Part shown: piece after piece, positions 5,331-46,972 of the stretch
Position numbering within the stretch: the first letter of the stretch is position 1
Layout of the letters: each line of letters starts with the position of its first letter
Virus record (IMG/VR): IMGVR_UViG_3300046167_000825
Span: 62,001-126,000 of that record
Strand: one strand, 5' to 3'
DNA length: 64,000 nucleotides
Translations under genes and position numbers: made by a program
The notes under the pieces: generated by a model
Seen by the model: the letters and a program-made list of their open reading frames with translations, nothing else
Told to the model about the DNA's origin: nothing
The model's database searches: none

Positions 5331-6341
5331 ATGTCTTTAGACGAGAAGATTAAAACGATTTTGAAAGAGTTGGGTGTGGATGTTTTTTTCCACACAGATC
5401 CTAAAACAAATACCACCGTTGGCAGTTTCGTATTGCCAAAGGAAAAAGCGAAAAAACAAACAAAGGATAACTTAATGTATGACTTAAAACTGAATGACAA
5501 ATATCTCATCCCTATCGAGAAGGGTCAAGCCGTAGGAAAGGGTTGGAAATCACGTTCTGGTTATAAACCAATGGGTGTCACATGGCATTGGACTGCTGGA
5601 TGGGATTTAGAACGAGGTTGTTCTAAGATTCTTGGTGGTGCTAACGCTTCTCGGAAAGGAAAGGCATCTGCTCACTTTGGTGTGGGTCGTTCTTTTGATG
5701 AAGGGATTGATAGATATGTCACCATCGAAAACCGTTCGTGGCACGCTGGTGCGAATCAGACACTTCGTTGGGATGGCAAGCCTTGTGTTATCAATGGTGT
5801 TCGATACAGTGGTGCTTCCTACTGTATTGGAATCGAAACTGTGAATGTAGGCTATGCTCGTAAAGGTGTGAAAGCCAAAGAGGATTGGAGTGAGTGTGCT
5901 TCAGCCAATGGGACAGAGTACAAGATACAGCCTTGGACAGAAGAACAGATTGAAATGATGATTGCTCTAGGGAAACATATCCAAGAGAAATGGAGTCATC
6001 TCACTTGGGAAGACCACCATGATCATCAAGATTTATGTGCTGGTTATAAGACAGACAGTATTGGTTTTCCTTTCGCTCGTGTTCTCAGAGGTGTTTATAA
6101 CGACCCTTCCATCCCAGATGTGTGGTCACCCTTCCTCACAAATGAACAACGCCAACAAGCCCTCATCGATCTAGGTTATGACTTGGGTAAATGGGGTGCA
6201 GATGGCGATTGGGGTCGTATGTCCGACTCGGCTCTACGGGATTTCCAAGAGTTACACGGAATGGTTGAAAACGGTATGTGGACGACTTTCGTGTCCAAAA
6301 AAGTTTATACTGCACTAGAGGAAAAGGGGTTGAAGAAGTAG
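5331..6341 (+). CDS. Endolysin: N-acetylmuramoyl-L-alanine amidase (Amidase_2) with C-terminal peptidoglycan-binding domain
   Basis: TWHWTAG, ASAHFGV, RSWHAG, IGIETVN and HDH motifs. C-terminal LGYDLGKWGADGDWG...ALRDFQELHG is PG_binding_1-like. Confidence 0.85.
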   Translation: MSLDEKIKTILKELGVDVFFHTDPKTNTTVGSFVLPKEKAKKQTKDNLMYDLKLNDKYLIPIEKGQAVGKGWKSRSGYKPMGVTWHWTAGWDLERGCSKILGGANASRKGKASAHFGVGRSFDEGIDRYVTIENRSWHAGANQTLRWDGKPCVINGVRYSGASYCIGIETVNVGYARKGVKAKEDWSECASANGTEYKIQPWTEEQIEMMIALGKHIQEKWSHLTWEDHHDHQDLCAGYKTDSIGFPFARVLRGVYNDPSIPDVWSPFLTNEQRQQALIDLGYDLGKWGADGDWGRMSDSALRDFQELHGMVENGMWTTFVSKKVYTALEEKGLKK

Positions 6342-6355
6342 GGTCTTTTCGTATA
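6327..6355 (+). promoter_or_regulatory. Variant of the bipartite promoter motif (GGGTTG-N15-TTCGTATA)
   Basis: Same spacing as the consensus, about 32 nt before ATG 6388. Confidence 0.45.
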
Positions 6356-6387
6356 TATAAAAAGGCACATATAATAGGAGAATACAA

Positions 6388-7107
6388 ATGACAAAAAAAG
6401 CCTCAAAATTAGAACCAGACCTTCAAAAGGATTTGCTAGACAAGCCTCTTCATTGTTTGGAGGGGGTTGACCTCGTGGGTCTAACAATGAATGACGGTAT
6501 TCATTTAATAGAGCAGATTGTAGGAGAGATCAACGGCTACCTTCATGGGTCAAGTCTAGCGAAAAACCTCGCTCGTCAAAAGATCAACCGTCAGAAGAAG
6601 TTGGCTAATCTTTCGATAATCTTCGATAAACAACTTGAAGTAGTTATTTTTGAAGATCCCTCTCAAGAAGAAAATACTCAAAAAGAAACTATTCAAAAAA
6701 AGACACCCAAACCCAAGAAACCCAAGAAGAAAAAAACCCCAACTCCAGCCCCAACTCTCATTGTAACTGAAGGCTTTGAAATAGAAGAAACCCCCGATTT
6801 GGATTCTTTGATTGTAGAAGCCACGAAAAGGAACATCCCTTTGAAGGGTATCCCCAAAACAGTAGATGCCATTCGGGATCACATTAAGAAAGTTGTATTG
6901 GAAAGGGACGCAGAGTTACCCATAATTAAACCATCAAAACCCAGACCAACTCGTGTGGTTTCCATGACCCCCAACAAAGAAAAGAAACAATCTCGATTGT
7001 CTAAGTTGGTGGATTTGGCAAAAACAAGAGACTTAGAGGAACTTGAACAGTATGCCTCAAAGACACTGGGAGTAGAGGACACCGATGACAGCCAAGACAG
7101 ATTTTGA
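6388..7107 (+). CDS. Hypothetical protein with K/P-rich linker
   Basis: AGGAG RBS, 239 aa ORF. Confidence 0.65.
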   Translation: MTKKASKLEPDLQKDLLDKPLHCLEGVDLVGLTMNDGIHLIEQIVGEINGYLHGSSLAKNLARQKINRQKKLANLSIIFDKQLEVVIFEDPSQEENTQKETIQKKTPKPKKPKKKKTPTPAPTLIVTEGFEIEETPDLDSLIVEATKRNIPLKGIPKTVDAIRDHIKKVVLERDAELPIIKPSKPRPTRVVSMTPNKEKKQSRLSKLVDLAKTRDLEELEQYASKTLGVEDTDDSQDRF

Positions 7108-7339
7108 AAACTTTTTGAATACCGTACTCGGTGTTCTATGTGAATATCCAGAGCGATGTGTAATTGATATCCATTCCTCTTCCCAATCCTCTTTTCTAGT
7201 GTCTATTAAAGTAGACCCCTCAGATTATGGGAAAGTGATAGGGCAAGGTGGTGAGATAGCGAAAGCAATACGAACCATCATTCGAGCGTATGCTGGGAAG
7301 CACCGTGTCAAGTTTCTATTTGAAATAGGTTCATTATGA
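7085..7339 (+). CDS. khpA: Single-KH-domain RNA-binding protein (KhpA/YlqC-like)
   Basis: VDPSDYGKVIGQGGEIAKAIRTII matches the KhpA GxVIGxxG...IRT signature, and 84 aa is typical. Confidence 0.8.
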   Translation: MTAKTDFENFLNTVLGVLCEYPERCVIDIHSSSQSSFLVSIKVDPSDYGKVIGQGGEIAKAIRTIIRAYAGKHRVKFLFEIGSL

Positions 7340-7629
7340 ACTGGTGGTATTCGGGAACAAAAACCAAACGAAATGCTCTTCAAACATTGTCAGATCAGCA
7401 CATCCTAGAGTTCATCCAACAACATGAACTTGCTCGGAAAGACTTTGACGAGGCTTTCGCTGCTTGTTCCCTTGAGCGACAGTACTACCTCCAAGAGTTA
7501 TTGGATATCACTTCCAAGAGGGATAAAAGTCCCGTTATGGATGCCGTTCAAAAAGCAGATAAGATTCAAAAGAGGGGCAATCGTTTGGCGTACTTTCATG
7601 GGAAACCTCGAAAGAAAAGGAGTTCGTAA
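7336..7629 (+). CDS. Hypothetical protein
   Basis: Overlaps neighbours at ATGA and TAATG junctions. Confidence 0.6.
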   Translation: MNWWYSGTKTKRNALQTLSDQHILEFIQQHELARKDFDEAFAACSLERQYYLQELLDITSKRDKSPVMDAVQKADKIQKRGNRLAYFHGKPRKKRSS

Positions 7630-8325: not shown

Positions 8326-8336
8326 GGGGGGCGACT

Positions 8337-8900: not shown

Positions 8901-8913
8901 ACTTTGCCATTTG

Positions 8914-8942
8914 GGATCGTTTCCAAACTCAACCTCCGTATA
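8914..8942 (+). promoter_or_regulatory. Bipartite promoter motif GGATCG-N15-TCCGTATA
   Basis: Exact consensus, 33 nt before ATG 8976. Confidence 0.75.
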
Positions 8943-8975
8943 TAAAACAGACCAGTTATATACGGAGGTTTTTTT
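8931..8975 (+). terminator. 15-bp perfect inverted repeat plus U-tract that contains the promoter -10 element and the downstream RBS
   Basis: aacctccgtatataa (8931-8945) / ttatatacggaggtt (8956-8970), followed by T-run. Confidence 0.75.
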
Positions 8976-9851
8976 ATGTCAAATGTTTTGCACACCCCAG
9001 AGTCACACTCTGAACACCCCGACTTTGAGGAGTATCTCTCCATTCTTTTGTTGGAAGAGGAGATATCAGTAAATAATGTTTCTGAGAGAATCCAAGAACT
9101 TATAAAGCCAGCAACCCTATCCAAATCAATGGAACAAACAATCACAACACAAGTTAACAGAAGGCTAATTGAACTAGCCATACCAACCCCCCCACCAAAG
9201 GAACAAAGCACTATGCCTACAACCCAATTTTTGAACCAAATGGATAAAGGATGTTTATATGCCACCGAACTCTTGGATAACAATGAGAACGCTGTCTATG
9301 ATATTTTAACCTTCGTGAAAAGGGTTTCCAACCGAAAACGAGGAGGCAAAATCCGAGTCCCCTCAAAGGTTCGTGAAACTCTATTGCCGATTTCAAACTC
9401 CCCCACCACCTTCAGTTCTTTCCTTGTATCTCTTTTAACTCATTGCTTATGTCAGATAACGGCAGAAGACCTCAATGCGACTTACCAGTTTGTGACGGGT
9501 CGAAAACACAACTATTCTAAGCCTCGTCAAGTCCTAGAACATGCAGAGAAAACACACTGGAAGGACACAGAGATTATCTTTCGTGGCGATTTGGATGAGA
9601 TGGCAGCAGAGGTCGGGGTATTCTTTGATGAACCTACGGATCTCACTGAACCTACGGATCTCCACCAAACCGTCCGAGACTTGTTGGGTATGGTGGAGAA
9701 ACAATCCAAACAAATACAATACTTGTCAAGCATTGTATTGGCTAACCAACAAGCCCCCAATGAGGACAACAAGGTTTCTTTCTCTATGGATAAAGAGGAA
9801 CTCCTTCAATATCTCATTCAAAACAACAAACTCAATTTAACCATCAACTAG
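8976..9851 (+). CDS. Hypothetical protein
   Basis: GGAGG RBS, 291 aa. Confidence 0.65.
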   Translation: MSNVLHTPESHSEHPDFEEYLSILLLEEEISVNNVSERIQELIKPATLSKSMEQTITTQVNRRLIELAIPTPPPKEQSTMPTTQFLNQMDKGCLYATELLDNNENAVYDILTFVKRVSNRKRGGKIRVPSKVRETLLPISNSPTTFSSFLVSLLTHCLCQITAEDLNATYQFVTGRKHNYSKPRQVLEHAEKTHWKDTEIIFRGDLDEMAAEVGVFFDEPTDLTEPTDLHQTVRDLLGMVEKQSKQIQYLSSIVLANQQAPNEDNKVSFSMDKEELLQYLIQNNKLNLTIN

Positions 9852-9860
9852 GAGTACAAC

Positions 9861-10598: not shown

Positions 10599-10622
10599 AC
10601 ATTGACTAGACGATTTTCCAAC

Positions 10623-12732: not shown

Positions 12733-14771
12733 TATATGAAACAACCCCCAGACCCCCTTCGGATAGAAAAGGGTTTACGATAACATCCTTGAAAGACCTC
12801 TTTCATTTGGTTGATAAATACCCAACCAAAGAACCGTATATCATTGCTTGGGAATATGTTTTCATGGACTATTCTTGGGTTTGGATACATCCGAGAGTGT
12901 TGAAAGAAAGTAAACACATGCCAGAGTTCTGGATTCAGTTGGAGGACTGGAGAACAAAGGGCAATCTAGTTCGGTCAGATAACAAAAGTTGGGGTGATAA
13001 AAAGAAAAAATATGCCAAATTAACACAGCCCGTTGATGCAAAGAACTCGGAGGCACTTCGTTTTCCGAAGATTCTTGGAAGGGGTGTTCTTTCAATTGCT
13101 TATGGGACTTCACCAGAGAAAGCAGAACTCTTTAAGAAAAAATGTCTTGCTATCATAAAACGCTTTCAAGGGGATGATTCCCTCGCAGATATTAACGATC
13201 TGTACCCCCGAAAGATGAAGGTCACGGTTAGCGTTATCGAAACCTCTGAGAAATGGGTTATCAACTACGCAGAAGGAGTCCTAGAGATCAATGCTAGTGC
13301 GTTCTTGGGGCAGAGCCTTTCAAGGCAACAGATGCTGTTGTTGAGAGGATTCGGTTTGGCTTATTTCTCTTTGAAACTACGCCCGTCTGATATGAAGAAA
13401 TGGTTCAAGTATTACCGAGTCAAAAAACCCATTGCCAACCGTAAGTTCTATCACCCAGACATCACAAAACTTCAGATAAGTTGGGCAAGTGGTTTGGCTG
13501 ACTTCGTGTTGGGTGAAGAAACCTCTGTGATGAAGACCTTCAGAGAGTACTTCCAGAGAACCTCCGTTGGGGCTAGTCGGGTTGACCTCTCTCAGTTCCC
13601 AACTGAAATGGCTAGTTCGGTGATGGCATCTAGTATTGAACTAGCCGAACCCTTCAAAAACACTCCGTTTCAGAACCTTGAAACCAATGATATCCTAGAT
13701 ATTATGGGTTTGAGCGATGCTGCCGTTGCCACTCCCACTTTACTGGGAGGTTTGACGGGTGCTAATAAAGTGGTTGCCACTGACAACACCTTCAGAGATA
13801 TTGTGGCATACTCCATAGAAACCGATGAGGGGGGTAATGCTGAATGGGATCTTGGTGAGGGTAAAGCCGTATCAATTGCTAGAACCATTTGGTACAACAA
13901 GAAGACGGGTGTGTCTGCCATAGAGAATGACCTTTTTGAACTAGATGAGTCTTTTCAAGGGAAAGGTATTGGGGTTCGGATGGTTTCAAATCAGATAGAT
14001 ATGTGTCTAGCGAAGGGCATTCAAAAAATCATGTGCTATGCCGCAAGAGGTGATGATGAATATGTGGGCTACAAGGTGTGGCACAAAATGGGTTATGATG
14101 CCCTCCTAACTCCCAAGAATCTTGATGAGCACTCCGATGATGAAGATGGTTTCTATTGGTGGGTCTTGAAATCCCTAGAAAAGAAAATAAATGAATACCC
14201 CGAAGATATCTTGCACCGAGAAGTGGATCTTCTCTTACAAAAAGCCGTGGGGTCAAAGAAACCCAGTTATTTCAGAAGCCTCCCCACCCCATTCTTTTCT
14301 CGTTATATGAACATTCGCTTTGAAGAACCACCCTTTGCCAATGATTGGTCAGACCTCGTGCCGACTTTATCCAGAGCAGAGATTTTTCAATACTATTCTT
14401 TCTTGAGTGCTCAAATGAGTAAAGGTGACATCGTCAGTTTCAATCTGTTCAAAGACTTAGAACTCAGTATCACGAAAGACACCATACAAAATCTTATGGA
14501 TGTTGAAGGTTTTGAGGATTGGTGGGGTGAGAACGGTGGTGGATATAAAGCCACTCTTGATTTGAGTGAGGGTGTCAATAGCCCCGCTTATATGATTCTC
14601 TCTTTATACCGTCAAAAGAAGGGCTTGACAAAGATGTCCTCAGACGATCTATTGACTAAGGCAATGGGGTATCTTTCATCGAAAGACATCGCCCTCTTTG
14701 ATGAGGCTCGGAGAGAACTCCGTGTGGCTTCAAAATCTGTTTCTCGCATCGCCACTCTTTGGCTTGCATAA
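12729..14771 (+). CDS. GNAT-like domain protein, paralogue 2
   Basis: FELDESFQGKGIG, GYKVWHKMGYDA, LMDVEGFEDWW...ATLDLS. ATG 12729 overlaps the upstream TGA. Confidence 0.6.
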   Translation: MIYETTPRPPSDRKGFTITSLKDLFHLVDKYPTKEPYIIAWEYVFMDYSWVWIHPRVLKESKHMPEFWIQLEDWRTKGNLVRSDNKSWGDKKKKYAKLTQPVDAKNSEALRFPKILGRGVLSIAYGTSPEKAELFKKKCLAIIKRFQGDDSLADINDLYPRKMKVTVSVIETSEKWVINYAEGVLEINASAFLGQSLSRQQMLLLRGFGLAYFSLKLRPSDMKKWFKYYRVKKPIANRKFYHPDITKLQISWASGLADFVLGEETSVMKTFREYFQRTSVGASRVDLSQFPTEMASSVMASSIELAEPFKNTPFQNLETNDILDIMGLSDAAVATPTLLGGLTGANKVVATDNTFRDIVAYSIETDEGGNAEWDLGEGKAVSIARTIWYNKKTGVSAIENDLFELDESFQGKGIGVRMVSNQIDMCLAKGIQKIMCYAARGDDEYVGYKVWHKMGYDALLTPKNLDEHSDDEDGFYWWVLKSLEKKINEYPEDILHREVDLLLQKAVGSKKPSYFRSLPTPFFSRYMNIRFEEPPFANDWSDLVPTLSRAEIFQYYSFLSAQMSKGDIVSFNLFKDLELSITKDTIQNLMDVEGFEDWWGENGGGYKATLDLSEGVNSPAYMILSLYRQKKGLTKMSSDDLLTKAMGYLSSKDIALFDEARRELRVASKSVSRIATLWLA

Positions 14772-14818
14772 TTTATCTATATCTCTATTTATGTGATGAC
14801 TTTTATTAGGAGTATTCT

Positions 14819-17140
14819 ATGAAAAAACAAGCAAAACTCTCTCGGATTCCAGCAGAGGATGAAACTTCAATCGGTGTCCCTATGAAGTTTTTGGGGAAGC
14901 CTTACACAGTTACAGCCCCAGAAAGCCAAATGGATGAGATATCTATGTTGTGGGCGAACTGGAAACCCTCCATGACAATGTTGAATAAAAATAGTCTTTC
15001 ATACAAGACAGTCCCGAAGTTCAAACGGGGTGTTCGGAACTTGATGAGTAAGAACAGTTTTATGCTCTCTATGTCAGATGAGAAATGGGTTTTCAACTGG
15101 TCATTGGCTCAACAGACTCTCGAAATCAATGTCCAAGCGAAAATGTCGAAAGCGAAAATCAGACGATTGGCTGCCTTTGCTTTTGGGATTATGATGTATG
15201 ACACGGGCCTCAAGCCAAAATCTCGAATCTTTTTCAAGCGTAAAATCAAGAGAGAGAAGCCCCCATTACAAGGTATCCAAAAATATCTCGGTTTCTTGAA
15301 AGACGGTATGGCGTTGGGTCGTGCAAGAGCCGCTTTCGCTTTCGGCTTTATGATGCACTTGGAACAAGTCAGTAAAAAGTTTTTTGGTCATCCCCTCCAT
15401 GCAATGGTGGGAGAGGTCTTCTTCGACAAAAACAACTTTGTTGTTGATGAAGAAACACAATACACCCGCTTTGAGATAGATGAAGAAAGTCCTCTTGGTT
15501 ATGAGTTTGACTCAGAGCGTTTTGACCTTGTTTATAAAGGGAAATCAGAAAGTCAGATTGCTGCAATGAAACGGGTTACTGTTGCTGGGATGGATTATGA
15601 AACAGCCCTAGATTCTACTGGGATTGCCCCCTTCACAAACGCTTTGAAAAAATATATCACCAATGCCGTGAATGACCCTCAGAGCCGAAAACACTCTGAA
15701 GTTCTTAGGGGTTTAGGATTAGGTCAGTCTTCTCAGTTTGATCCCAACAAGTTCGAGTTACGGCTTAATGTTGGTTCAAGTAGTATAGGCTTTCGTCTTA
15801 CTTATAATGGCAGACATTGTTGTAACGGGTCTCGTAGTCAAATGACAAAAAACACACACTACAACGCTTTGTGTGAAGTGTCTAGTTCTTTTCAAGGATT
15901 GGGTGCTGGGATGCACATGTCGGCTTCTCAGATTGAACACGCAATGAAAACGGGTAAGAAGAAGATTAAGGTTTCTGCCGCTTTGGATGGTGGTTGGAGA
16001 ACTTGGAACAAGTTCGGTTTTGAGTCCAATAACCCAGTTATGGGTATAGTCAATGGTGCAAAAAGTTGGTGTGAGAAGTCTGTCGATGCCAAAATCTACG
16101 AGATGGGTTATGTAGATCGTCAACAAGTGATGACGGATCTCATGGTGGGTATGGTTCAACAACTCGGGGGGGCTTCTGCCTTCAGTGGTGCAAGCACGAC
16201 TCAAACTGGCCCCGTTACTCCAGTATTACCTTCAGATTCAAATGCAGATATTGCAGAAATCTTGAAGGAAGTGATTGATACCTCTGGTTCGTATTCGGGA
16301 GCGATGAAAAGGATGCTTCAAGCCGCTGGACTCCCACCAACGGCAAACAAAAGACATATAACCACTTGGTTTGCTGGTAATACCGTCACAGTGGCTCAAC
16401 AACAGAAAGTACATGATTATTTCACTTCGGGTAGTTCTGGCTTTGAAGATAAGTTCCGTAGATTGCGTGGTTATCCTCCTCGTGCGGGGCAATCAAGATC
16501 AAATGTTAATACCTCTCAAATGAACTCAGATATCAAAGGGTTAATAGAGTCTTTTGGTTGGTTTGGTGGTGAAGCCTTTAACGGCACATCCGTTCTTAAC
16601 CTCATCAAATCTCCTCAGTTCGATGTTGTTTTTGGTTATGATAACTTGCCTAAAATTGTGGCGTTCTTCCGTTCTAAAAACTATGAGGATCAAGTTCCAG
16701 CACTCACGAAAGCAAAACTCACTCCTAGAACACAGTACATGCAAGATTGTATGGAACTAGAGGGTTTCTCAAAGTGGTGGTCAGAGGGTGGTGGTCGCAA
16801 TTGGAGTGGAACACTTGACCTCACAGACGGGAAATACTCTATTGCTGTTTTGGCGATGGATCATTATCGAAAAATGAAAGTTCAAAACAAGCCCGATGTT
16901 TATGCAGAGGATTCAGCCTTTCAGCGTGCTCGTGTTGCAAGTGACATGACTTCTATTATTGATGCTGATATCCTTGAGAACTTTGTCAATATACCAGAAT
17001 CTGAAGAATGTGGTGGTGGTCTTCTTCGTATGGATATTGCTTTGATGGAACAAGCAACTCGTAATGCTCGTCTTGAAAAGAAGGACTTGGAAAAAGGTGG
17101 TCTTGTTCGTGTTGCTTCTCGTTGGTTGGGTGGAGAGTAA
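14819..17140 (+). CDS. GNAT-like domain protein, paralogue 3
   Basis: CEVSSSFQGLGAG, GGWRTWNKFGFES, CMELEGFSKWW...GTLDLT. AGGAG RBS. Confidence 0.6.
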   Translation: MKKQAKLSRIPAEDETSIGVPMKFLGKPYTVTAPESQMDEISMLWANWKPSMTMLNKNSLSYKTVPKFKRGVRNLMSKNSFMLSMSDEKWVFNWSLAQQTLEINVQAKMSKAKIRRLAAFAFGIMMYDTGLKPKSRIFFKRKIKREKPPLQGIQKYLGFLKDGMALGRARAAFAFGFMMHLEQVSKKFFGHPLHAMVGEVFFDKNNFVVDEETQYTRFEIDEESPLGYEFDSERFDLVYKGKSESQIAAMKRVTVAGMDYETALDSTGIAPFTNALKKYITNAVNDPQSRKHSEVLRGLGLGQSSQFDPNKFELRLNVGSSSIGFRLTYNGRHCCNGSRSQMTKNTHYNALCEVSSSFQGLGAGMHMSASQIEHAMKTGKKKIKVSAALDGGWRTWNKFGFESNNPVMGIVNGAKSWCEKSVDAKIYEMGYVDRQQVMTDLMVGMVQQLGGASAFSGASTTQTGPVTPVLPSDSNADIAEILKEVIDTSGSYSGAMKRMLQAAGLPPTANKRHITTWFAGNTVTVAQQQKVHDYFTSGSSGFEDKFRRLRGYPPRAGQSRSNVNTSQMNSDIKGLIESFGWFGGEAFNGTSVLNLIKSPQFDVVFGYDNLPKIVAFFRSKNYEDQVPALTKAKLTPRTQYMQDCMELEGFSKWWSEGGGRNWSGTLDLTDGKYSIAVLAMDHYRKMKVQNKPDVYAEDSAFQRARVASDMTSIIDADILENFVNIPESEECGGGLLRMDIALMEQATRNARLEKKDLEKGGLVRVASRWLGGE

Positions 17141-17188
17141 TGAAGAGCCTCGTTTCTCGCATTGCTTCTCGGCACATGGGTGATGAAG

Positions 17189-17217
17189 GGATCGCTTTCA
17201 ATAGGACTTTCCGTATA
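17189..17217 (+). promoter_or_regulatory. Bipartite promoter motif GGATCG-N15-TCCGTATA
   Basis: Exact consensus, 30 nt before ATG 17248. Confidence 0.75.
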
Positions 17218-17247
17218 AGAGTTGCACACCAACTTGAGGAGAGAACT

Positions 17248-17724
17248 ATGACAGCATCCTTCACCCCCGTGACTGAGTTACAACCGAGAAAGAAATGGCG
17301 TAAGAAAATCATTTACGCTGGGTTGTTCCTTGATGACACCACTAGAGCCAACTTGGTTCGGTGGTGGAATCAACAAGAAGGGACAGAAGCACTCCACGAA
17401 AAACAGATTGTCCACCACCTCACTATGGTTTTTAAGCCCTCTCAAGAAGATGTTGAGAATATGCCATTGGGTAAGATCGTGAAGATGTCCGTCATTGGCT
17501 ATGGTCAAGACGATAAAGCCCAAGCCCTTTTCGTTAAAATTGAGGGAGGGGTTCGGTCACAGAACACTAAACCTCATATCACGATGGCTATCTCTTCAAG
17601 TGGTTCTGCAAAGAACTCCAATGACTTGGACATTATCCCTTTAACGGGGCCGACCTTTGAGGGTATCTTTGGATACAGTGGTAAAGGGAAGGATTATCAA
17701 CAAATTGCTTGGGAATCCGAATAA
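17248..17724 (+). CDS. 2H phosphoesterase (a longer in-frame start at 17140 is possible)
   Basis: Two HxT motifs (HHLTMVF, PHITMA). GAGGAG RBS before 17248. Confidence 0.7.
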   Translation: MTASFTPVTELQPRKKWRKKIIYAGLFLDDTTRANLVRWWNQQEGTEALHEKQIVHHLTMVFKPSQEDVENMPLGKIVKMSVIGYGQDDKAQALFVKIEGGVRSQNTKPHITMAISSSGSAKNSNDLDIIPLTGPTFEGIFGYSGKGKDYQQIAWESE

Positions 17725-17741
17725 ATATTGAGAGGATAGGT

Positions 17742-18053
17742 ATGATGGAACAGACTTTACAAGGAGTTTCTATCATGCTTCCCCCTTCTTCGGTATCCAC
17801 TACCATCGACAATTACATCTGGGATCTCGCCCAGCACCAACCACTCATAGACGACTTGGAGAAAAACCTTCAAGTGATCTGTTTGTTTCACCCCGAAAGA
17901 GAAATCCTTTATCTGATAGATGATTATTACCATCTACCCGTAGCAATAAAGAAAATCACAACTAACCCTAGAGAAGACATCCAAGAACTAGCGTATCTTT
18001 GGTTCTCTCTCATACAACTAGCACGAGGACGATATGCCACAATCACTGCTTGA
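17742..18053 (+). CDS. Hypothetical protein
   Basis: GAGG RBS, tiles with neighbours. Confidence 0.55.
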   Translation: MMEQTLQGVSIMLPPSSVSTTIDNYIWDLAQHQPLIDDLEKNLQVICLFHPEREILYLIDDYYHLPVAIKKITTNPREDIQELAYLWFSLIQLARGRYATITA

Positions 18054-18321
18054 CAGAATGGATTACACACAACTTAAAAGCCTTGCTGAGTCACGAGGGT
18101 GCTTACCCGAAGAACCTCATAACAGTGAAGAGATACGAAAAGCCATCCACGATTGGGAGATGGATCGTGGCTTACCCTTCAAGGGTTTGAGAGAGATTGC
18201 CACGAAAAATACCGAGAACACTACCAACTTGAGTGAGGTCTTACAAGCCCTTTCTGAGTTACAGACAACGGTCAATGAAGTCAATGACCGATTGAAACGA
18301 TTAGAGAACAAACATGCGTAG
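18034..18321 (+). CDS. Hypothetical protein with C-terminal coiled coil
   Basis: LSEVLQALSELQTTVNEVNDRLKRLE heptads. Confidence 0.55.
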   Translation: MPQSLLDRMDYTQLKSLAESRGCLPEEPHNSEEIRKAIHDWEMDRGLPFKGLREIATKNTENTTNLSEVLQALSELQTTVNEVNDRLKRLENKHA

Positions 18322-19155: not shown

Positions 19156-19184
19156 GGATCGTGTCCTAGATTCTTTTCCGTATA
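19156..19184 (+). promoter_or_regulatory. Bipartite promoter motif GGATCG-N15-TCCGTATA
   Basis: Exact consensus, 32 nt before ATG 19217. Confidence 0.75.
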
Positions 19185-21579: not shown

Positions 21580-23090
21580 AAACACTCTTACGATCAGCCT
21601 TTCAAGTACAATCCTCTGAATCCCTTGATTTCGCCTTACAGAACTACAACCTCATTCGGGGCTCTGGATTATCCTTTGACCTCCCCGAAGACACCACGAT
21701 ATGGAAGTACATTGTTGACTTTGTTCGTGACCACCAACATGTCCCCAATATAGGAACATTGCGAACACACTTTGACCGTATCCAAGAACATACCGTGGCA
21801 GATAGGCTTGAAATGTTGTCGATGGAGAAACCCAAAGTTCAAGGGGATTTCCGTGTTCACCTCAATGTGTTGGTGGAGGATAAACGCCTCAGAAAAATGA
21901 ATCAAATCCTAGCCGATGCCAAATCTATCTTGACAACGGGTATTCAAATCAAAGAGGGGAAAAAGACTAGAGTGATGAAAGGCCCAGTCGACTCAGTTCG
22001 CTTTATCCTTGACAACTCTCAAGAGGTTGTTGCACCCGTAACGGGAGAACGCTTATCGGGGGATGTCACAAGTGACGGTGTTGACTTTTGGGATGAGTAT
22101 GAACGAGTGGAGAGTGACCCTTTGGCTGGAATGGGGCAGTTCTGTGGGATTGAACAAATCGACACGGCTATTCGTGGTGCGAAGAAACAAGAGTTGTGGC
22201 TTCATGCCGCTTTCACGGGAGGGTTGAAGAGTACCTTCACTCTGAACTGGGCATACAACCAAGCCGTCTATTATAAGTTCAGTTCGTGCTTCTTCTCATT
22301 GGAAATGCCTTACAAACAAGTACGAAGAATCTTGTATGCCATGCACAGTGGTCACGAGAAGTTCGATAAAGTTCGCCCCAAAGGAAAAGGGGATGGTGTA
22401 ACGGTTCAAGGGATACAGTTCGGGGAACTCTCAGCCAAAGCAAGGAAGTTCGTGAAAGAGTATGTAGTTCCCGATTTCAATGACCCAGAGAACAACTATG
22501 GTTCAATATACATCGAAGTGGCTGACCCCGACAAGGAAGCCATTAAAGTCGCTGACATTCGTTCCCGTGCCGAAACCATATTCGCCAAGAACCCCTTCAA
22601 AATACTCTTTGTCGACCACGCTCTATTGGTTGCCCCCCGTAAGTGGGTGTCAAGCACCACAGAACGATTAAACGAGGTTCTGAGGGACTGTAAGCGAATG
22701 GCTATGAACTTCAATCGTGGTGAAGGTATGGCAGTGTTGTGTTTGTTTCAGATATCTCGTGAGGGATTTAAGAGTGCCATGAAGAAAGGGGAGAAAGACC
22801 CAGAGAAAAGAGGGGAGTATGATCTCACGATGTTGTCGTATGCAAATGAAGCCGAGCGAAGTTCGGATATTGTGACAGCGACTTGGGTGGATGATGACCT
22901 CCGAAAAGAGTCTTTGGTGAAGTTCCAGTGTTTGAAGACTCGTGATCACGCCCCCTTTGAGCGTTTCACGGCTAGTGTTCATTGGGAAACTAGGCGAGTG
23001 AAAACCCTTGACCCCAACGAACACGGGCTGAATGTTGAGGAAGTGGGTCAGAGTATAGACGATCAAATCGAAGCCGTTCTCCCCGTTTGA
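21576..23090 (+). CDS. dnaB: DnaB-like replicative helicase
   Basis: AFTGGLKS (H1), FSLEMP (H1a), ILFVDH (H2), FQISR (H3), EAERSSDIV (H4), KTRD. Confidence 0.88.
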   Translation: MKTLLRSAFQVQSSESLDFALQNYNLIRGSGLSFDLPEDTTIWKYIVDFVRDHQHVPNIGTLRTHFDRIQEHTVADRLEMLSMEKPKVQGDFRVHLNVLVEDKRLRKMNQILADAKSILTTGIQIKEGKKTRVMKGPVDSVRFILDNSQEVVAPVTGERLSGDVTSDGVDFWDEYERVESDPLAGMGQFCGIEQIDTAIRGAKKQELWLHAAFTGGLKSTFTLNWAYNQAVYYKFSSCFFSLEMPYKQVRRILYAMHSGHEKFDKVRPKGKGDGVTVQGIQFGELSAKARKFVKEYVVPDFNDPENNYGSIYIEVADPDKEAIKVADIRSRAETIFAKNPFKILFVDHALLVAPRKWVSSTTERLNEVLRDCKRMAMNFNRGEGMAVLCLFQISREGFKSAMKKGEKDPEKRGEYDLTMLSYANEAERSSDIVTATWVDDDLRKESLVKFQCLKTRDHAPFERFTASVHWETRRVKTLDPNEHGLNVEEVGQSIDDQIEAVLPV

Positions 23091-23118
23091 GGTCGTTCTG
23101 AGTGTGTGTTTCCGTATA
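23090..23118 (+). promoter_or_regulatory. Variant promoter motif AGGTCG-N15-TCCGTATA
   Basis: Exact -10 element, 30 nt before ATG 23149. Confidence 0.65.
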
Positions 23119-23148: not shown

Positions 23149-23535
23149 ATGAGAGTAACATCATTCAAAAGTGGTAGTAAGCGTAAATCCAGTATGGAAT
23201 ATTACAAGGATATTTACCTCAATATAAATGGCACTGACACGAAAGTGGGGCTGATTGGTAAAACGGGGTGGGGGGAGTATCTGGAATACCGAGTGTACTT
23301 CTTCAAAAATGACTTTGATGTTGCAAGCAGATCGATGCGTTTGCTCCACCATAATATCAGCCACAATCTCACTCAAAACACATCCCCCAATAAAGATGAA
23401 TCTGTGATCTTGATGCAAACCTACGACAATCTTAAAGAAGCAAATGGCTATGCCAAACGAGTCTTCAAGGACACTAAGACATTAAAGACAGAAATGTTCA
23501 ATGTCTATCTTAAACTACTACAAGCACTTGGGTGA
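23149..23535 (+). CDS. Hypothetical protein, tandem paralogue A
   Basis: LEYRVYF...TLKTEMFNVYLKLLQALG. GGAG RBS. Confidence 0.65.
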   Translation: MRVTSFKSGSKRKSSMEYYKDIYLNINGTDTKVGLIGKTGWGEYLEYRVYFFKNDFDVASRSMRLLHHNISHNLTQNTSPNKDESVILMQTYDNLKEANGYAKRVFKDTKTLKTEMFNVYLKLLQALG

Positions 23536-28225: not shown

Positions 28226-28285
28226 CAGATTTTTGGAAAAAACTAGATGAGGCTTTCGCCTATATCTTTCAAACAAAGAAGAAAA

Positions 28286-31227: not shown

Positions 31228-31649
31228 GGGGTGTTCGAGAAGCAAAAATATCTTGTCCAGAACAAGGGGATTTTTTGTTGTTGTGGGCTATCCCAAAAGA
31301 GAACAATCCGAGAGGTGTCTTTTCAGTTTTGGAGAACACGGCATGGGATTGTCTAGTTGGTAAGGTGAGTGGTGAAGTGTTGTCCCACGCTTTTCATGGT
31401 TGGGCGACACCTTTAGTTCGAGAACTCCCCCCACCACCCAAACAGATTCTTAGAAAGATGAAGGGGGAGGAATGTTGGATGCAGAAAGAGTGTGTAATGC
31501 ACAACAAGAAATGTTATCCCCACATGGATGTTCCAAATTGTTTTGAACCAGAGGAAGAATCCATCAGACACATTGTGAATTATATACTAGCAATGATGAA
31601 GCATGGTTATCGGGTAGTTTGGGTTGAGGGAAAAGAGTTTCAGATTTAG
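31224..31649 (+). CDS. Hypothetical Cys-containing protein
   Basis: 141 aa ORF with CWMQKEC...CYPH...CFEP. Confidence 0.55.
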   Translation: MRGVREAKISCPEQGDFLLLWAIPKENNPRGVFSVLENTAWDCLVGKVSGEVLSHAFHGWATPLVRELPPPPKQILRKMKGEECWMQKECVMHNKKCYPHMDVPNCFEPEEESIRHIVNYILAMMKHGYRVVWVEGKEFQI

Positions 31650-31677
31650 GATCGTTTCCCGTTTGGTTCTCCGTATA
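31649..31677 (+). promoter_or_regulatory. Bipartite promoter motif GGATCG-N15-TCCGTATA
   Basis: Exact consensus, 25 nt before the polymerase ATG. Confidence 0.75.
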
Positions 31678-37754: not shown

Positions 37755-37759
37755 TATTG

Positions 37760-37788
37760 GGATCGCTGCTCTGATTGATTTCCGTATA
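37760..37788 (+). promoter_or_regulatory. Bipartite promoter motif GGATCG-N15-TCCGTATA
   Basis: Exact consensus, 32 nt before ATG 37821. Confidence 0.75.
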
Positions 37789-37820: not shown

Positions 37821-38153
37821 ATGAGTAGAACGGGAACTTGGGTACTAGCCCAACAATGGGAAAATGAGAATTGGTCACCACACGAAGGTGATTACATGGA
37901 TTATTCCCCACACGATTTTGCGATCTCTCAACCAGAATGGCATGCAGTGTTCGGTGAATGTGTGGGGTTGCTCTTTCAAGCCCTCACGGAGCAAGGTGGT
38001 GGGGAAACACCCGCACGGATTCTGTATAGTAAGGCAGAGAATATGGCTGTCGATATCATTGCTATACAGAGAGAGAAGAGCATAGCCGAAGCCTATAAAG
38101 AACTTGGATATGAAATGGCTAACACCGAGTCATCAGATGAACTACCCTTTTAA
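37821..38153 (+). CDS. Hypothetical protein with SSB-like C-terminal tail (SSDELPF)
   Basis: GAGG RBS, acidic tail ending in PF. Confidence 0.6.
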   Translation: MSRTGTWVLAQQWENENWSPHEGDYMDYSPHDFAISQPEWHAVFGECVGLLFQALTEQGGGETPARILYSKAENMAVDIIAIQREKSIAEAYKELGYEMANTESSDELPF

Positions 38154-41656: not shown

Positions 41657-41657
41657 T

Positions 41658-43985: not shown

Positions 43986-44001
43986 ATTCTTTATTCGTAT
44001 A
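43973..44001 (+). promoter_or_regulatory. Bipartite promoter motif GGATCG-N15-TTCGTATA
   Basis: Exact -35, 37 nt before ATG 44039. Confidence 0.7.
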
Positions 44002-44038
44002 GAAAGTGTCAGTAACAACAAACACATTGGAGAACTAA

Positions 44039-44350
44039 ATGACACAAATCTACGAAATACTTGAAGCAATAAAAGCAAACACGAATCACATTGTCGTGAT
44101 GACCCCCTCAGAAGATGAGAGTCGCATTATCGTCAATGAATTGCGAACTGCCCAAACTTTTGCTGGACACGGTCGAGTGTTCTTCAAGGACAATACAAGA
44201 ATCTCTATCATCACCGCGGGGGATACCTACGATGAAGGTGTCACGGACTATTCTCTTTTGCACTGGGCTTGGTATAATCAACCAGAAGCAAACAAAATGA
44301 AAAAGGCACAACAATGGGAAGCGAAGGCGAAGGAAATCCTCACGAAGTAA
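44039..44350 (+). CDS. Hypothetical protein
   Basis: GGAG RBS. Confidence 0.55.
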   Translation: MTQIYEILEAIKANTNHIVVMTPSEDESRIIVNELRTAQTFAGHGRVFFKDNTRISIITAGDTYDEGVTDYSLLHWAWYNQPEANKMKKAQQWEAKAKEILTK

Positions 44351-45526: not shown

Positions 45527-45554
45527 TTGTGTCTCCTTTTATGATTTCATCTTA

Positions 45555-45583
45555 TATACGGAAAGAGAACACGTTCACGATCC
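45555..45583 (-). promoter_or_regulatory. Bipartite promoter motif GGATCG-N15-TCCGTATA
   Basis: Exact consensus on the minus strand, 28 nt before ATG 45526. Confidence 0.75.
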
Positions 45584-46378
45584 CACTCTCTTTGCCCACT
45601 TCTTATTGGGGCAAGAGGCACAAGGTTGGACACAAGCCTTTTTCACACGATCCTTCTCCTCAGAAACCATAATCCCAGCACCATAATTAGCAGACATCAC
45701 GGCACAATTGAATAATCCTCCCGTGTAACGACCATCGGAGTTATGACAGTAACCAAAGATTTGACCGTCATCCCTAACCCGTAAACGAGCACCCACTGCC
45801 AAAGGTTGATCATGAACCAAAGCCCAACGGTGTGCATCGTAGAAAGTCGGCTTGGAGGTGTGATCATATACCGTGTGACCACGCAAGAAAGCCATATTCA
45901 AAATGTCTATGACCTCCAGTTCATCTTCTGTGAAACCAACCCAACCTTCGGAAAGGGTTTCTTCTGGCTCAGAATCGGGGTTGTGCGACCAATCAACGAC
46001 TTCTGACTCCTCCTCTAGTTCTAGTTCAGTGGGTTCTACACAAAGGGTCTTATCGTCCGATTCTGAGGCTTCTTGTACTTCTAGTTCTAGTTCAGAGGGC
46101 TTCCAGTATTCTCTACCACCCTCCGATTTCTGAAGTGTCAGCAAGCCCATTTCTTGGACTCTCTCACAGACGGCATCCCACTTGTCGCTTGAAAGACGGG
46201 AAATACCGTAGTACTTCGTGACGACTCTTTTCCACTCTGAGTTGTCTTTGCTCTTACGACCGAGACCACTTTTCAGTGTTCCTACATATTGGGAAACAAC
46301 ATTGAAAAGGGCTTGGCACGCTCCATCGAGGGTTTTTTCTTCTGAGGGTTGTATGAAAGTTGATAGTATGTCACTCAT
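45575..46378 (-). CDS. Hypothetical protein with acidic linker
   Basis: AGGAG RBS, 267 aa. Confidence 0.6.
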   Translation of the reverse strand: MSDILSTFIQPSEEKTLDGACQALFNVVSQYVGTLKSGLGRKSKDNSEWKRVVTKYYGISRLSSDKWDAVCERVQEMGLLTLQKSEGGREYWKPSELELEVQEASESDDKTLCVEPTELELEEESEVVDWSHNPDSEPEETLSEGWVGFTEDELEVIDILNMAFLRGHTVYDHTSKPTFYDAHRWALVHDQPLAVGARLRVRDDGQIFGYCHNSDGRYTGGLFNCAVMSANYGAGIMVSEEKDRVKKACVQPCASCPNKKWAKRVGS

Positions 46379-46863
46379 TGTGCATTCTCCTTATATTGAT
46401 CAAACCATTTGGGTGTGGGGGTGTGTTTCCAAGTGGGTATCAACCCATTCTTAAAAATCTTATTTGCTATATAATATTGATAGGAAGCGTGGGGGTTGTC
46501 TAGTTTCCATTTCACATCCATTGCCAGAACGAAAGGAGTCCTATCACCCAACAAAGGCACGAGAGCCTTCGCACACTCTTTAATTACAAGATGCGACTTG
46601 TGAATCTTACCATACCGTCTAGTGTATTCTTCACCAAGACCGTTGCCGTAAGCGATAACCCACTCCCAGTTCCCCAAACTCTCTCTTGCCCACTTGGTAC
46701 AAGGGTGGTTCTTGTGGGTGGGTTTATAAGGTGCTTCAAGCCCCCAGAGGTGAAGGTTGGTGCAAAGTATTTGAGCAACTTCTAGTGGCATTTTGATTGC
46801 GTGTGCCTCACATGACTCCCGTGCTGAGATTAAGGGGTCTTCATTGACAGCAAATAAGTTCAT
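46375..46863 (-). CDS. Pyrimidine-dimer DNA glycosylase / endonuclease V family (Pyr_excise-like)
   Basis: MNLF...HAIKMPLEVAQIL...YKPTHKNHPCTKWAR...EYTRRYGKIHKS. AGGAG RBS. Confidence 0.8.
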   Translation of the reverse strand: MNLFAVNEDPLISARESCEAHAIKMPLEVAQILCTNLHLWGLEAPYKPTHKNHPCTKWARESLGNWEWVIAYGNGLGEEYTRRYGKIHKSHLVIKECAKALVPLLGDRTPFVLAMDVKWKLDNPHASYQYYIANKIFKNGLIPTWKHTPTPKWFDQYKENAQ

Positions 46864-46891
46864 TGTTCTCTCCTTGTTTATTGGAAACATT

Positions 46892-46920
46892 GATACGGAG
46901 AAATCTATTGTGAGCGATCC
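46892..46920 (-). promoter_or_regulatory. Bipartite promoter motif GGATCG-N15-TCCGTATC
   Basis: Exact -35, 28 nt before ATG 46863. Confidence 0.7.
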
Positions 46921-46943
46921 CACACCTCTTTCTTATTTAAGTG

Positions 46944-46972
46944 CGGTTGCATTTCCGTTTGACTTCCGTATA
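46944..46972 (+). promoter_or_regulatory. Variant promoter motif CGGTTG-N15-TCCGTATA
   Basis: Exact -10, 30 nt before ATG 47003. Confidence 0.6.

What the first reader, a model, noticed from the sequence alone, without database searches (positions are those of the whole stretch)
6327..46972. Fixed-spacing bipartite promoter regulon GGATCG-N15-TCCGTATA
Seen: eight sites with exact GGATCG and a 15-nt spacer (8914, 17189, 19156, 31649, 37760, 43973 on +; 45583, 46920 on -), plus variants at 6327, 23090, 46944. All face the downstream gene and lie 25-37 nt before its ATG. Targets include SNF2, polA, Rad52-like, the glycosylase and the 2H enzyme. I saw none before the large structural genes. Established: this is not the sigma70 consensus. 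The CGTA core recalls ECF -10 elements and the N15 spacing recalls sigma28 promoters. Inference: a middle-gene promoter read by a phage-encoded or hijacked alternative sigma factor not encoded in this window.
Basis: partly seen in the sequence, partly recalled or inferred. Interest (0 to 1): 0.75.

Follow-up and report, generated by a model that had tools for sequence, protein, structure and literature searches.

The report
Jumbo-phage sigma-factor promoter regulon
A rigidly spaced two-box DNA signal sits in front of about 60 genes of an uncultured marine jumbo phage and is most likely the promoter read by one of the phage's own sigma factors. This is a familiar kind of phage gene-timing switch, but its sequence and sigma family have not been described.

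Summary
The window is part of a 289-kb marine virus contig. GGATCG-N15-TCCGTATA has 10 matches in the window against 0.19 expected. Genome-wide, about 60 sites fit a weight matrix, against 0 in shuffled genomes. Read as hexamers the motif is [GGATCG or CGGTTG]-N17-CGTATA. The spacing is fixed: 48 sites at one spacing and 0-1 at any other. A pyrimidine-purine pair lies 6-7 nt downstream. Nearly all sites are intergenic, face a gene, and lie 16-45 nt before a ribosome-binding site and start codon. GGATCG sites head replication and repair genes (polA, SNF2, helicase, SbcCD-like, glycosylase). CGGTTG sites head small unknown genes and Rad52. Large genes instead carry ATAATC-N3-CTATAT. No RNA polymerase domains were found, but two sigma-70-family genes lie outside the window. 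Relatives with sigma proteins 51-62% identical keep TCCGTATA and both upstream flavours, and the hexamers drift by lineage. The polA site keeps both boxes while its spacer diverges. Most likely it is a promoter class read by host core polymerase plus a phage sigma, probably the two-domain "sigma-B". Transcription starts, timing and the sigma assignment are untested.

The parts
6327..6355 (+). M-class promoter-like site, intermediate -35 flavour (GGGTTG-N15-TTCGTATA), 32 nt before the ATG of gene 6388-7107 (239 aa, unknown)
   Evidence: PWM 22.2 bits
8914..8942 (+). M-class site, flavour A (GGATCG-N15-TCCGTATA), before gene 8976-9851 (291 aa, unknown). The -10 box forms the 5' arm of a 13-bp hairpin (8933-8968) followed by a T-run.
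   Evidence: The inverted repeat was read directly from the sequence.
14768..14782 (+). Second promoter-like class (L-class), ATAATTTATCTATAT, 36 nt before gene 14819-17140 (773 aa, no family hit)
17189..17217 (+). M-class site, flavour A, 30 nt before gene 17248-17724 (158 aa; faint 2H-type tRNA_lig_CPD hit)
19156..19184 (+). M-class site, flavour A, 32 nt before the SNF2-family helicase gene (19217-20821)
23090..23118 (+). M-class site, variant AGGTCG, 30 nt before gene 23149-23535 (128 aa, unknown)
   Evidence: 26.1 bits
29131..29159 (+). M-class site, flavour A (TTCGTATA), inside ORF 28247-29980. It is followed by a ribosome-binding site and an in-frame ATG at 29180, which would give a 266-aa form holding the N6/N4 methyltransferase domain. 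The arrangement is kept in the relative with 82%-identical polA.
31649..31677 (+). M-class site, flavour A, 25 nt before family-A DNA polymerase (31703-34399). Both boxes are kept and the spacer diverges in relatives with 82% and 72% identical polA. One lineage has GCAACG in place of GGATCG.
37760..37788 (+). M-class site, flavour A, 32 nt before gene 37821-38153 (110 aa, unknown)
   Evidence: 31.9 bits
43973..44001 (+). M-class site, flavour A (TTCGTATA), 37 nt before gene 44039-44350 (103 aa, unknown)
45555..45583 (-). M-class site, flavour A, 28 nt before gene 45526-44732 (264 aa, unknown)
46892..46920 (-). M-class site, flavour A (TCCGTATC), 28 nt before the Pyr_excise (T4 endonuclease V-type) glycosylase gene 46863-46375. 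It is divergent from the 46944 site.
   Evidence: One metatranscriptome contig covers 46659-46862.
46944..46972 (+). M-class site, flavour B (gTG-CGGTTG-CA...TCCGTATA), 30 nt before the Rad52-family gene 47003-47695
   Evidence: 30.4 bits
51849..51863 (+). L-class site, ATAATCTGTCTATAT, 42 nt before the 798-aa gene 51906-54302, which heads a run of very large genes

Best explanation
The motif is the promoter of a phage-specific transcription class. A bacterial-type core RNA polymerase, presumably the host's, is redirected by a phage-encoded sigma-70-family factor. The sigma's domain 4 reads the upstream hexamer (core TG-s-G-r-T-y-G, as GGATCG or CGGTTG). Its domain 2 reads CGTATA exactly 17 bp downstream. 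Transcription starts at a purine about 7 nt after the -10 box.

The most likely reader is the 207-aa two-domain sigma, 'sigma-B', at G000 155283-155906, about 29 kb beyond the window. The GGATCG flavour serves replication, recombination and repair genes, which suggests middle timing. The CGGTTG flavour serves a dense block of small genes around the sigma-B gene. A different element, ATAATC-N3-CTATAT, precedes the large genes. It may be read by the RpoD-like 250-aa 'sigma-A'.

Shown here: the motif statistics, geometry, orientation and gene classes; the sigma genes; the absence of polymerase domains; and conservation in relatives. Inferred: that the sites are promoters, the start site, the timing, and which sigma reads which class.
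For: Statistics and geometry:
- 10 window matches against 0.19 expected.
- About 60 genome sites at 16 bits or more, against 0 in shuffles. 56 of 67 hits at 11 bits or more are intergenic, and most of the rest reflect my crude start calls.
- The upstream box is recovered from a seed built on the -10 box alone. Pyrimidine at +6 in 42/49 sites and purine at +7 in 46/49.
- One spacing only: 48 sites against 0-1 at any other spacing.
- A ribosome-binding site and start codon follow 57 of the 60 sites scoring 15 bits or more.
- There is no paralogy among downstream genes, so the similarity of the sites is not a product of duplication.

Who could read it:
- Two sigma-70-family genes lie outside the window.
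- No Rpb2_6 or Rpb1_2 domains were found, with valid controls.
- Sigma-70-consensus sites are not enriched.

Relatives:
- TCCGTATA at the same distance from a hexamer recurs in every lineage sampled that carries a sigma-B orthologue of 51-60% identity. There are 17 sites in 20.6 kb of L146 and 12 in L148.
- The hexamers drift by lineage: CGGTTG, CGGTTC or CCGTTG for one flavour, and GGATCG or GCAACG for the other.
- The polA site keeps both boxes while its spacer diverges.

Pointing to sigma-B:
- Its region 2.3/2.4 (FDTYAxQWxFxYMQQxNWKK) and its 4.2 helix (VSKQRCQQIIS) differ from the canonical sequences and are nearly invariant across the family. This matches an invariant -10 box and a conserved GTT core in the -35 box.
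- Sigma-A keeps a canonical region 2 but varies freely at the positions that read -35 and -12.
- Sigma-B models as sigma-2 plus sigma-4 with no folded sigma-3.
- The sigma-B gene lies in the block dense with flavour-B sites, downstream of M-class variants.
- In four lineages a GGTATAAT or GGTATAGT sits just upstream of it, within otherwise unalignable DNA.
Against: No transcription start is mapped. The only RNA evidence is one low-depth metatranscriptome contig at 46659-46862.

Sigma-A and sigma-B co-occur in the motif-bearing lineages, so co-occurrence cannot separate them. The one outgroup (LR745208.1) lacks both sigma families and the motif.

Sigma-B's recognition helix does not change where the lineage hexamers change, so there is no clean protein-DNA co-variation.

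Two conserved -35 flavours sharing one -10 box are not simply explained by a single sigma-4 domain.

The contig is only about 66% complete, so a polymerase or another factor could be encoded in the missing part. The search for a T7-type polymerase had no working positive control. Host and timing are unknown.
Confidence: 0.68

Rival explanations
1. The sites are promoters as described, but the reader is the RpoD-like 250-aa sigma-A (G000 191237-191989), or sigma-A reads one flavour and sigma-B the other.
For: Sigma-A has complete regions 1.2, 2, 3 and 4, and its -35-reading residues are non-canonical (SRPQVYQ against TRERIRQ). It co-occurs with the motif in L150 and L152. Two flavours could mean two readers.
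Against: Sigma-A's region 2.3/2.4 is canonical (FSTYAIWWVRQSI). That predicts a TATAAT-like -10 box with A at -11 and T at -7, which CGTATA lacks but the L-class ATAAT supplies. Its positions equivalent to T440, E585 and R588 vary among orthologues, while both boxes of the motif stay conserved. Two very different sigma-2 domains sharing one -10 box is unlikely.
Confidence: 0.12
2. Shared -10 box with alternative upstream readers, analogous to T4 sigma appropriation. A sigma reads CGTATA, while GGATCG (or CGGTTG) is bound by a separate phage activator that replaces the sigma-4 to -35 contact. One candidate is the sigma-4-only protein at G000 236708-237310. This would give two temporal classes.
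For: Both flavours share the -10 box and the geometry and are conserved separately in several lineages. They split by gene function. A protein holding only a sigma-4-like helix-turn-helix is encoded after the clamp loader, behind a flavour-B-like promoter.
Against: No AsiA or MotA homologue was detected, although those searches had no positive control. The sigma-4-only protein belongs to a very broad family of about 500 representatives, so it is not specific to motif-bearing phages. Intermediate hexamers exist (GGGTTG six times, GGGTCG twice), which suggests a continuum read by one domain.
Confidence: 0.13
3. The motif is read by a host alternative sigma factor (ECF-like or sigma-28-like) that the phage hijacks. 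The phage sigma genes then serve other promoters.
For: A CGTA -10 core is typical of the ECF factor sigma-W (PMC5758882). The host is unknown, so its sigma repertoire cannot be checked.
Against: The upstream box lacks the ECF 'AAC' signature. The boxes drift among closely related phage lineages (polA 81-82% identical) in step with fast-evolving phage sigma genes. That is expected for a phage-internal sigma-promoter pair and not for a signal fixed by a host factor. Both phage sigmas have non-canonical DNA-reading residues and therefore need matching promoters.
Confidence: 0.05
4. The sites are not sigma-dependent promoters. They could be promoters for a phage RNA polymerase encoded in the missing third of the genome, or operator or insulator repeats.
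For: The contig is about 66% complete. The T7-type polymerase search was uninformative. Some sites overlap hairpins, for example at 8933-8968.
Against: Single-subunit and phiKZ/AR9-type phage polymerases use short contiguous or -10-only promoters. They do not use two hexamers separated by a non-conserved 17-bp spacer with a pyrimidine-purine pair 7 nt downstream (established knowledge). There are no beta/beta' domains in 289 kb. The strict co-orientation and the fixed position before ribosome-binding sites fit promoters.
Confidence: 0.02

Closest known systems
Bacillus phage SPO1 middle promoters read by phage sigma gp28 (then gp33/gp34 for late genes)
   Same: A phage-encoded sigma-70-family factor redirects host core polymerase to a bipartite, non-sigma-A promoter with a spacer of about 17 bp. 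This forms a temporal cascade that begins with host-sigma transcription (own knowledge; cascade summarised in PMC13401047).
   Different: The consensus is different (SPO1 AGGAGA-N17-TTTNTTT, from memory). No sequence relationship to gp28 was shown. There are two conserved -35 flavours here. The host and phage lineage are unrelated (marine, uncultured, family-A polymerase).
T4 middle promoters (MotA box plus sigma-70 -10 box, with AsiA)
   Same: Early and middle classes share a -10 box and differ in the upstream element. The middle class drives replication and recombination genes.
   Different: No AsiA or MotA homologue was detected. The -10 box here is not a host sigma-70 box. The upstream box sits at the canonical -35 position with a 17-bp spacer, not at -30.
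ECF (group 4) sigma promoters, e.g. B. subtilis sigma-W (TGAAAC ... CGTA)
   Same: CGTA core in the -10 box (PMC5758882). The candidate reader has two domains (sigma-2 and sigma-4). Cognate-type sites lie upstream of the sigma gene, suggesting autoregulation.
   Different: The -35 box lacks 'AAC'. Sigma-B's nearest sequence and fold matches are sigma-S, sigma-32 and sigma-A, not ECF factors. No anti-sigma factor was identified.
Sigma-28/FliA promoters (TAAA-N15-GCCGATAA)
   Same: Superficial likeness of CCGTATA to CCGATAA, and of the 'N15' when the boxes are written long.
   Different: The upstream box is unrelated. With hexamers the spacer is 17. FliA/WhiG models score far below their cut-offs for both phage sigmas.
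Sigma factors of 'group 2' jumbo phages (Iyer et al. 2021, PMC7824862)
   Same: Jumbo phages without their own polymerase that encode RpoD-like and minimal sigma factors, which probably recruit host core polymerase.
   Different: Group 2 is defined there by a family-B polymerase and a gp23-type capsid. This phage has a family-A polymerase. No promoter consensus was given for those phages.

Membership tests
Sigma-70-family (bipartite) promoter | Two conserved boxes separated by a non-conserved spacer of fixed length, about 17 bp | tested here: met
   Hexamer-N17-CGTATA. 48 sites at one spacing and 0-1 at any other.
Sigma-70-family (bipartite) promoter | Intergenic, co-oriented with the gene, upstream of the ribosome-binding site and start codon | tested here: met
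   56 of 67 hits are intergenic by crude gene calls. 57 of the 60 sites at 15 bits or more have a ribosome-binding site and start codon, mostly 16-66 nt downstream.
Sigma-70-family (bipartite) promoter | Transcription starts 6-8 nt downstream of the -10 box | tested here: inconclusive
   Only a sequence hint: pyrimidine at +6 (42/49) and purine at +7 (46/49). The single RNA contig is uninformative.
Housekeeping sigma-70/sigma-A promoter | TTGACA-N17-TATAAT consensus | tested here: not met
   The boxes differ, and consensus sites are not enriched in the span.
ECF (group 4) sigma regulon | -35 box containing AAC and -10 box containing CGT | tested here: not met
   CGT(A) is present, but the -35 box is GGATCG or CGGTTG with no AAC (PMC5758882).
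ECF (group 4) sigma regulon | Sigma with only sigma-2 and sigma-4 domains | tested here: met
   In the sigma-B model residues 1-82 and 130-205 are helical, and residues 82-129 have pLDDT below 50. HMM matches cover regions 2 and 4 only.
ECF (group 4) sigma regulon | Sequence membership in ECF groups and an adjacent anti-sigma factor | tested here: inconclusive
   Only the general sigma-70 superfamily model TIGR02937 passes its cut-off. The best specific matches are RpoH, RpoS and RpoD. Anti-sigma factors were not examined.
Sigma-28/FliA regulon | TAAA-N15-GCCGATAA and a FliA-type sigma | tested here: not met
   There is no TAAA box. FliA_WhiG scores 79 bits for sigma-A against a cut-off of 190, and is not among the 25 listed matches for sigma-B.
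T4-type sigma appropriation (MotA/AsiA) | AsiA and MotA homologues, and an activator box at -30 combined with a host -10 box | tested here: not met
   PF09010 and PF09114 give no match, though without a positive control. The -10 box is not host-type.
Phage-encoded sigma cascade (SPO1/T4-like logic) | Phage sigma gene(s), no phage polymerase, and distinct promoter classes for distinct gene sets | tested here: met
   Sigma genes. No beta/beta' domains. M-class A and B against L-class gene sets.
Phage-encoded sigma cascade (SPO1/T4-like logic) | The specific sigma binds and activates the specific promoter | not testable with these tools
   Complex prediction does not evaluate protein-DNA pairs. 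This needs in vitro transcription or reporter assays.

The most novel reading that the evidence does not exclude
One -10 specificity is combined with two interchangeable upstream readers. CGGTTG would be read by sigma-B's own domain 4. GGATCG would be read by a separate phage factor, or gated by methylation of the GATC it contains, since the phage encodes many N6/N4 methyltransferases. This would give an early-to-middle switch without changing sigma. The system has diversified into lineage-specific, mutually orthogonal sigma-promoter pairs across a clade of uncultured marine jumbo phages.
Probability: 0.15. Interest if true: 0.75.

Novelty: new member of a known kind. Interest (0 to 1): 0.55.

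Why it matters
The result gives a concrete regulatory map for an uncultured marine jumbo-phage clade found in many seawater metagenomes. The map holds about 60 promoters of one class, a second class before the large genes, and the candidate sigma factors. This phage combines a family-A polymerase with its own sigma factors and no detected RNA polymerase, a combination not covered by the published jumbo-phage groups.

The lineage-specific drift of the -35 box around an invariant -10 box is a natural series of sigma-promoter variants. It can be tested directly in E. coli with synthetic genes. It could also yield orthogonal expression parts and show how sigma domain 4 specificity evolves. The motif should also improve gene-start and operon annotation in these genomes.

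Tried and rejected
- **RNA evidence.** Only one metatranscriptome run holds any of the region. It gives one 204-nt contig at depth 2.6 (46659-46862), which is useless for start mapping.
- **IMG/VR scan for the exact pattern.** Almost all hits were single chance matches. The one multi-hit contig is the same phage from another sample.
- **polA-based locus searches.** IMG/VR gave nothing. The metagenome collection gave identical strains or relatives at 40-49% identity that lack the motif.
- **LR745208.1 (485 kb, polA 46% identical).** It has no motif and neither sigma family. This is consistent with the model, but it cannot separate sigma-A from sigma-B.
- **Complex prediction of sigma-B with promoter DNA.** The tool does not fold or score protein-DNA pairs, so this is no evidence either way.
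- **A loose 'host-type' pattern, GGTAnnnT.** It is not enriched in intergenic DNA overall (31 oriented intergenic copies of 303 in total). Only the copies upstream of sigma-B are supported, by conservation in relatives.
- **Class-B similarity as gene duplication.** Rejected, because there is no paralogy among the downstream proteins.
- **Terminase and tail-sheath Pfam searches.** These were meant to anchor the structural module and found nothing. PHROG and Pfam gave no function for the L-class genes except one methyltransferase.
- **Literature.** No paper links CCGTATA to a phage promoter.

Full report
**What the window is.** The window is bases 62001-126000 of a single 289,014-bp IMG/VR virus contig. 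The contig has 44.7% G+C, is classed as linear, and CheckV estimates it at about 66% complete. Near-identical DNA is present in many seawater and marine metagenomes. It has no close match among deposited phage genomes. The nearest deposited record is an unannotated 485-kb 'uncultured phage', LR745208.1, whose polA is 46% identical.

**Checking the observation.** GGATCG-N15-TCCGTATA at up to 2 mismatches gives 10 matches in the window against 0.19 expected, and 0 of 100 shuffles reach that number. GGATCG alone is not enriched: 18 copies against 24.8 expected. Each window site faces a ribosome-binding site plus start codon 20-37 nt downstream.

**Extent and anatomy.**
- Across the contig, TCCGTATA is the most intergenic-enriched 8-mer. 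35 of its 40 copies lie in the 9.5% of the sequence that is non-coding.
- I aligned 49 intergenic YCGTATA sites chosen only by the downstream box. They show an upstream box at a fixed place: T-30, G-29, [C/G]-28, G-27, [G/A]-26, T-25 (49/49), [T/C]-24, G-23 (48/49). They also show a pyrimidine at +6 (42/49) and a purine at +7 (46/49), counting from the last A of TATA.
- Written as hexamers the element is [GGATCG or CGGTTG]-N17-CGTATA. This is the canonical geometry of the sigma-70 family, and the pyrimidine-purine pair sits where a transcription start would be expected.
- A weight-matrix scan gives 60 sites at 16 bits or more, against 0 in five Markov-shuffled genomes.
- The spacing is absolute: 48 sites at one spacing and 0-1 at every other spacing from 11 to 21.
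- Nearly all sites are intergenic and co-oriented with the next gene. The few 'coding' calls come from my crude start-codon choices. The exception is 29131, which truly lies inside an ORF.

**Two upstream flavours.** Intermediates also occur: GGGTTG six times and GGGTCG twice. Flavour B also has a conserved leader, roughly TGTCAATCAATCAA. The proteins downstream of these sites share no paralogy, so the near-identical promoters are kept by function and not by duplication.

**Gene content behind each flavour.**
- Flavour A heads polA, an SNF2 helicase, a methyltransferase, a Pyr_excise glycosylase, a RecD/Dda-like helicase and an SbcC-like gene. The SbcD-like gene and the clamp-loader gene carry intermediate or B-like hexamers (GGGTTG and CAGTTG).
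- Flavour B heads mostly small unknown genes clustered at 143-165 kb of the contig. In the window it heads the Rad52 gene.
- No site lies in contig regions 20-68 kb, 110-143 kb (window 48-64 kb) or 250-273 kb, where the largest genes are.

**A second promoter-like class.** Upstream regions without the motif are enriched for CTATAT: 20 sequences against 1.9 expected. The full element is ATAATC-N3-CTATAT, 26-42 nt before large genes. In the window it occurs at 14768-14782 and 51849-51863. It is conserved in relatives. Its ATAAT half resembles a canonical -10 box. Most of the genes it heads have no Pfam or PHROG match, so calling them 'late' or 'structural' remains an inference.

**Who could read the motif.**
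- The contig has no Rpb2_6 or Rpb1_2 polymerase domains, and the controls for these searches worked. The T7-type polymerase search had no working control.
- Two sigma-70-family proteins are encoded, both outside the window. Sigma-A is 250 aa at G000 191237-191989, has regions 1.2, 2 and 4, and is closest to RpoD/RpoS. Sigma-B is 207 aa at 155283-155906 and has regions 2 and 4 only.
- A 200-aa protein holding only a sigma-4-like helix-turn-helix is encoded at 236708-237310, after the clamp loader. Its family is very broad, about 500 representatives.
- Sigma-B models as two helical domains joined by a low-confidence linker, with no folded sigma-3. Its nearest solved folds are sigma-A, sigma-32 and sigma-S.
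- Sigma-70-consensus sites are not enriched across the finding's span.

**Comparative test.**
- Both sigmas have homologues at about 90% and at 51-69% identity in metagenome assemblies. Some lie on contigs of 58-302 kb. polA has a graded series of homologues at 98, 82, 81, 72 and 63% identity.
- Around sigma-B orthologues, TCCGTATA recurs at the same distance from a hexamer. There are 17 such sites in 20.6 kb of L146 and 12 in L148.
- The -10 box is invariant in all five sigma-B sub-groups. The flavour-B hexamer is specific to each lineage:

| Lineage (locus) | Flavour-B hexamer |
|---|---|
| Own contig, L158 | CGGTTG(CA) |
| L146 | CGGTTG(AG) |
| L157, L159 | CGGTTC(G) |
| L148 | CCGTTG(AGA) |

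- Flavour A (GGATCG) recurs in L150, L152, L154, L155 and L157. In the L148/L153 lineage it is replaced by GCAACG (or ACAACG, CCAACG) at five sites, including polA.
- Upstream of polA both boxes are retained while the spacer diverges in the relatives with 82% and 72% identical polA. The 63% lineage shows AGATCG-N15-TCGGTATG.
- More distant phages lack the motif. LR745208.1 (46%) has none and also lacks both sigma families. L121 (40%) has none in its 22-kb locus and L123 (49%) none in its 2.8-kb fragment; their sigma content was not examined.
- A signal that is conserved under divergence, yet drifts among phage lineages, fits a phage-internal sigma-promoter pair better than a fixed host factor.

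**Which sigma.** This step is inference.
- Sigma-B's region 2.3/2.4 and its 4.2 recognition helix are non-canonical and almost invariant across the family. That matches the invariant -10 box and the conserved core of the -35 box.
- Sigma-A keeps a canonical region 2.3/2.4, which suits an ATAAT-type -10 box such as the L-class. Its residues equivalent to T440, E585 and R588 of sigma-70 vary freely among orthologues. That does not fit two strongly conserved boxes.
- The sigma-B gene sits in the block dense with flavour-B sites, downstream of weak M-class variants.
- In four lineages a GGTATAAT or GGTATAGT lies just upstream of sigma-B in otherwise unalignable DNA. This suggests host-sigma transcription that starts the cascade. 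In two other lineages sigma-B instead follows a glycosylase gene behind an M-class promoter.
- Against a clean assignment: both sigmas co-occur with the motif, and sigma-B's recognition helix does not change where the hexamers change.
- Why two flavours share one -10 box is unexplained. One tolerant sigma-4 domain, a separate activator, or methylation of the GATC in flavour A all remain possible. No AsiA or MotA homologues were detected.

**Comparison with known systems.**
- In logic the system resembles the phage sigma cascades of SPO1 and T4. It also fits the statement that some jumbo phages lack a polymerase and carry sigma factors (PMC7824862).
- The CGTA -10 core recalls the ECF factor sigma-W (PMC5758882). 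However, the -35 box lacks AAC, and sigma-B is not ECF-like by sequence.
- The likeness to sigma-28 promoters is superficial.
- No paper links this consensus to a phage.

**Verdict.** The feature is a new member of a known kind: a regulon driven by a phage-encoded sigma factor. Open points are the transcription starts, the timing, the sigma assignment and the meaning of the two flavours.

Noticed in passing
window 14768-14782 and 51849-51863; about 20 more across the contig: A second promoter-like class, ATAATC-N3-CTATAT, lies 26-42 nt before large genes. It is conserved in relatives (L150, L152, L156, L157). In some copies the upstream half reads GGTAGAAT or GGTATTCT, which looks like a TAnnnT -10 box.
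   Followed up: partly
whole contig (167 copies), e.g. in the spacer of the window 19156 and 43973 sites; also in relatives next to the sigma-B start: AGATTCTT, with the palindrome-like core AGAWTCT, is about 15 times over-represented. It is evenly spread (about 1 per 1.7 kb), occurs in all reading frames and on both strands, and often lies just upstream of flavour-B promoters. It looks like a DNA-level protein-binding or modification site.
   Followed up: partly
window 28247-29980 (site at 29131-29159, in-frame ATG at 29180): A 577-aa methyltransferase ORF contains an internal M-class promoter, a ribosome-binding site and an in-frame start that would give a 266-aa form holding only the methyltransferase domain. 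The arrangement is kept in relative L154. In the L153 lineage the promoter sits in front of a separate methyltransferase gene.
   Followed up: partly
window 8933-8975: The -10 box of the 8914 site forms the 5' arm of a 13-bp perfect hairpin (CCTCCGTATATAA / TTATATACGGAGG) followed by seven T's and the ATG. This looks like an intrinsic terminator overlapping the promoter, which would stop read-through but not the promoter's own transcript.
   Followed up: no
window 25351-27261: A DNA methylase gene appears to be interrupted by an intein (N6_N4_Mtase plus a weak Intein_splicing hit). Relatives carry up to about 10 tandem N6/N4 methyltransferase genes upstream of polA.
   Followed up: no
G000 155258-155282 and the equivalent positions in L146, L148, L158: GGTATAAT or GGTATAGT is conserved immediately upstream of sigma-B in four lineages. 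In this contig it ends 5 nt before the ATG and there is no ribosome-binding site, so the mRNA may be leaderless.
   Followed up: partly
flavour-B sites, e.g. window 46973-46995; G000 143-165 kb: There is a conserved leader downstream of flavour-B promoters, roughly TGTCAATCAATCAA, also seen in relatives. It could be a 5'-UTR element or an operator.
   Followed up: no
G000 51021-61151 (-), 13362-18119, 133897-139215; window 57821-62998: Very large ORFs of 3376, 1585, 1772 and 1725 aa. The one scanned (1772 aa) had no family hit; the others were not followed up.
   Followed up: no
G000 268830-268904: The contig carries a single tRNA-Ala (TGC). The 7-mer CGAACTA is also over-represented: 113 copies, roughly six times my back-of-envelope composition estimate.
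   Followed up: no
L148/L153 lineage: In this lineage the flavour-A core CAACG is the exact reverse complement of the flavour-B core CGTTG, at the same positions of the hexamer. This is not the case in the window's own phage.
   Followed up: no
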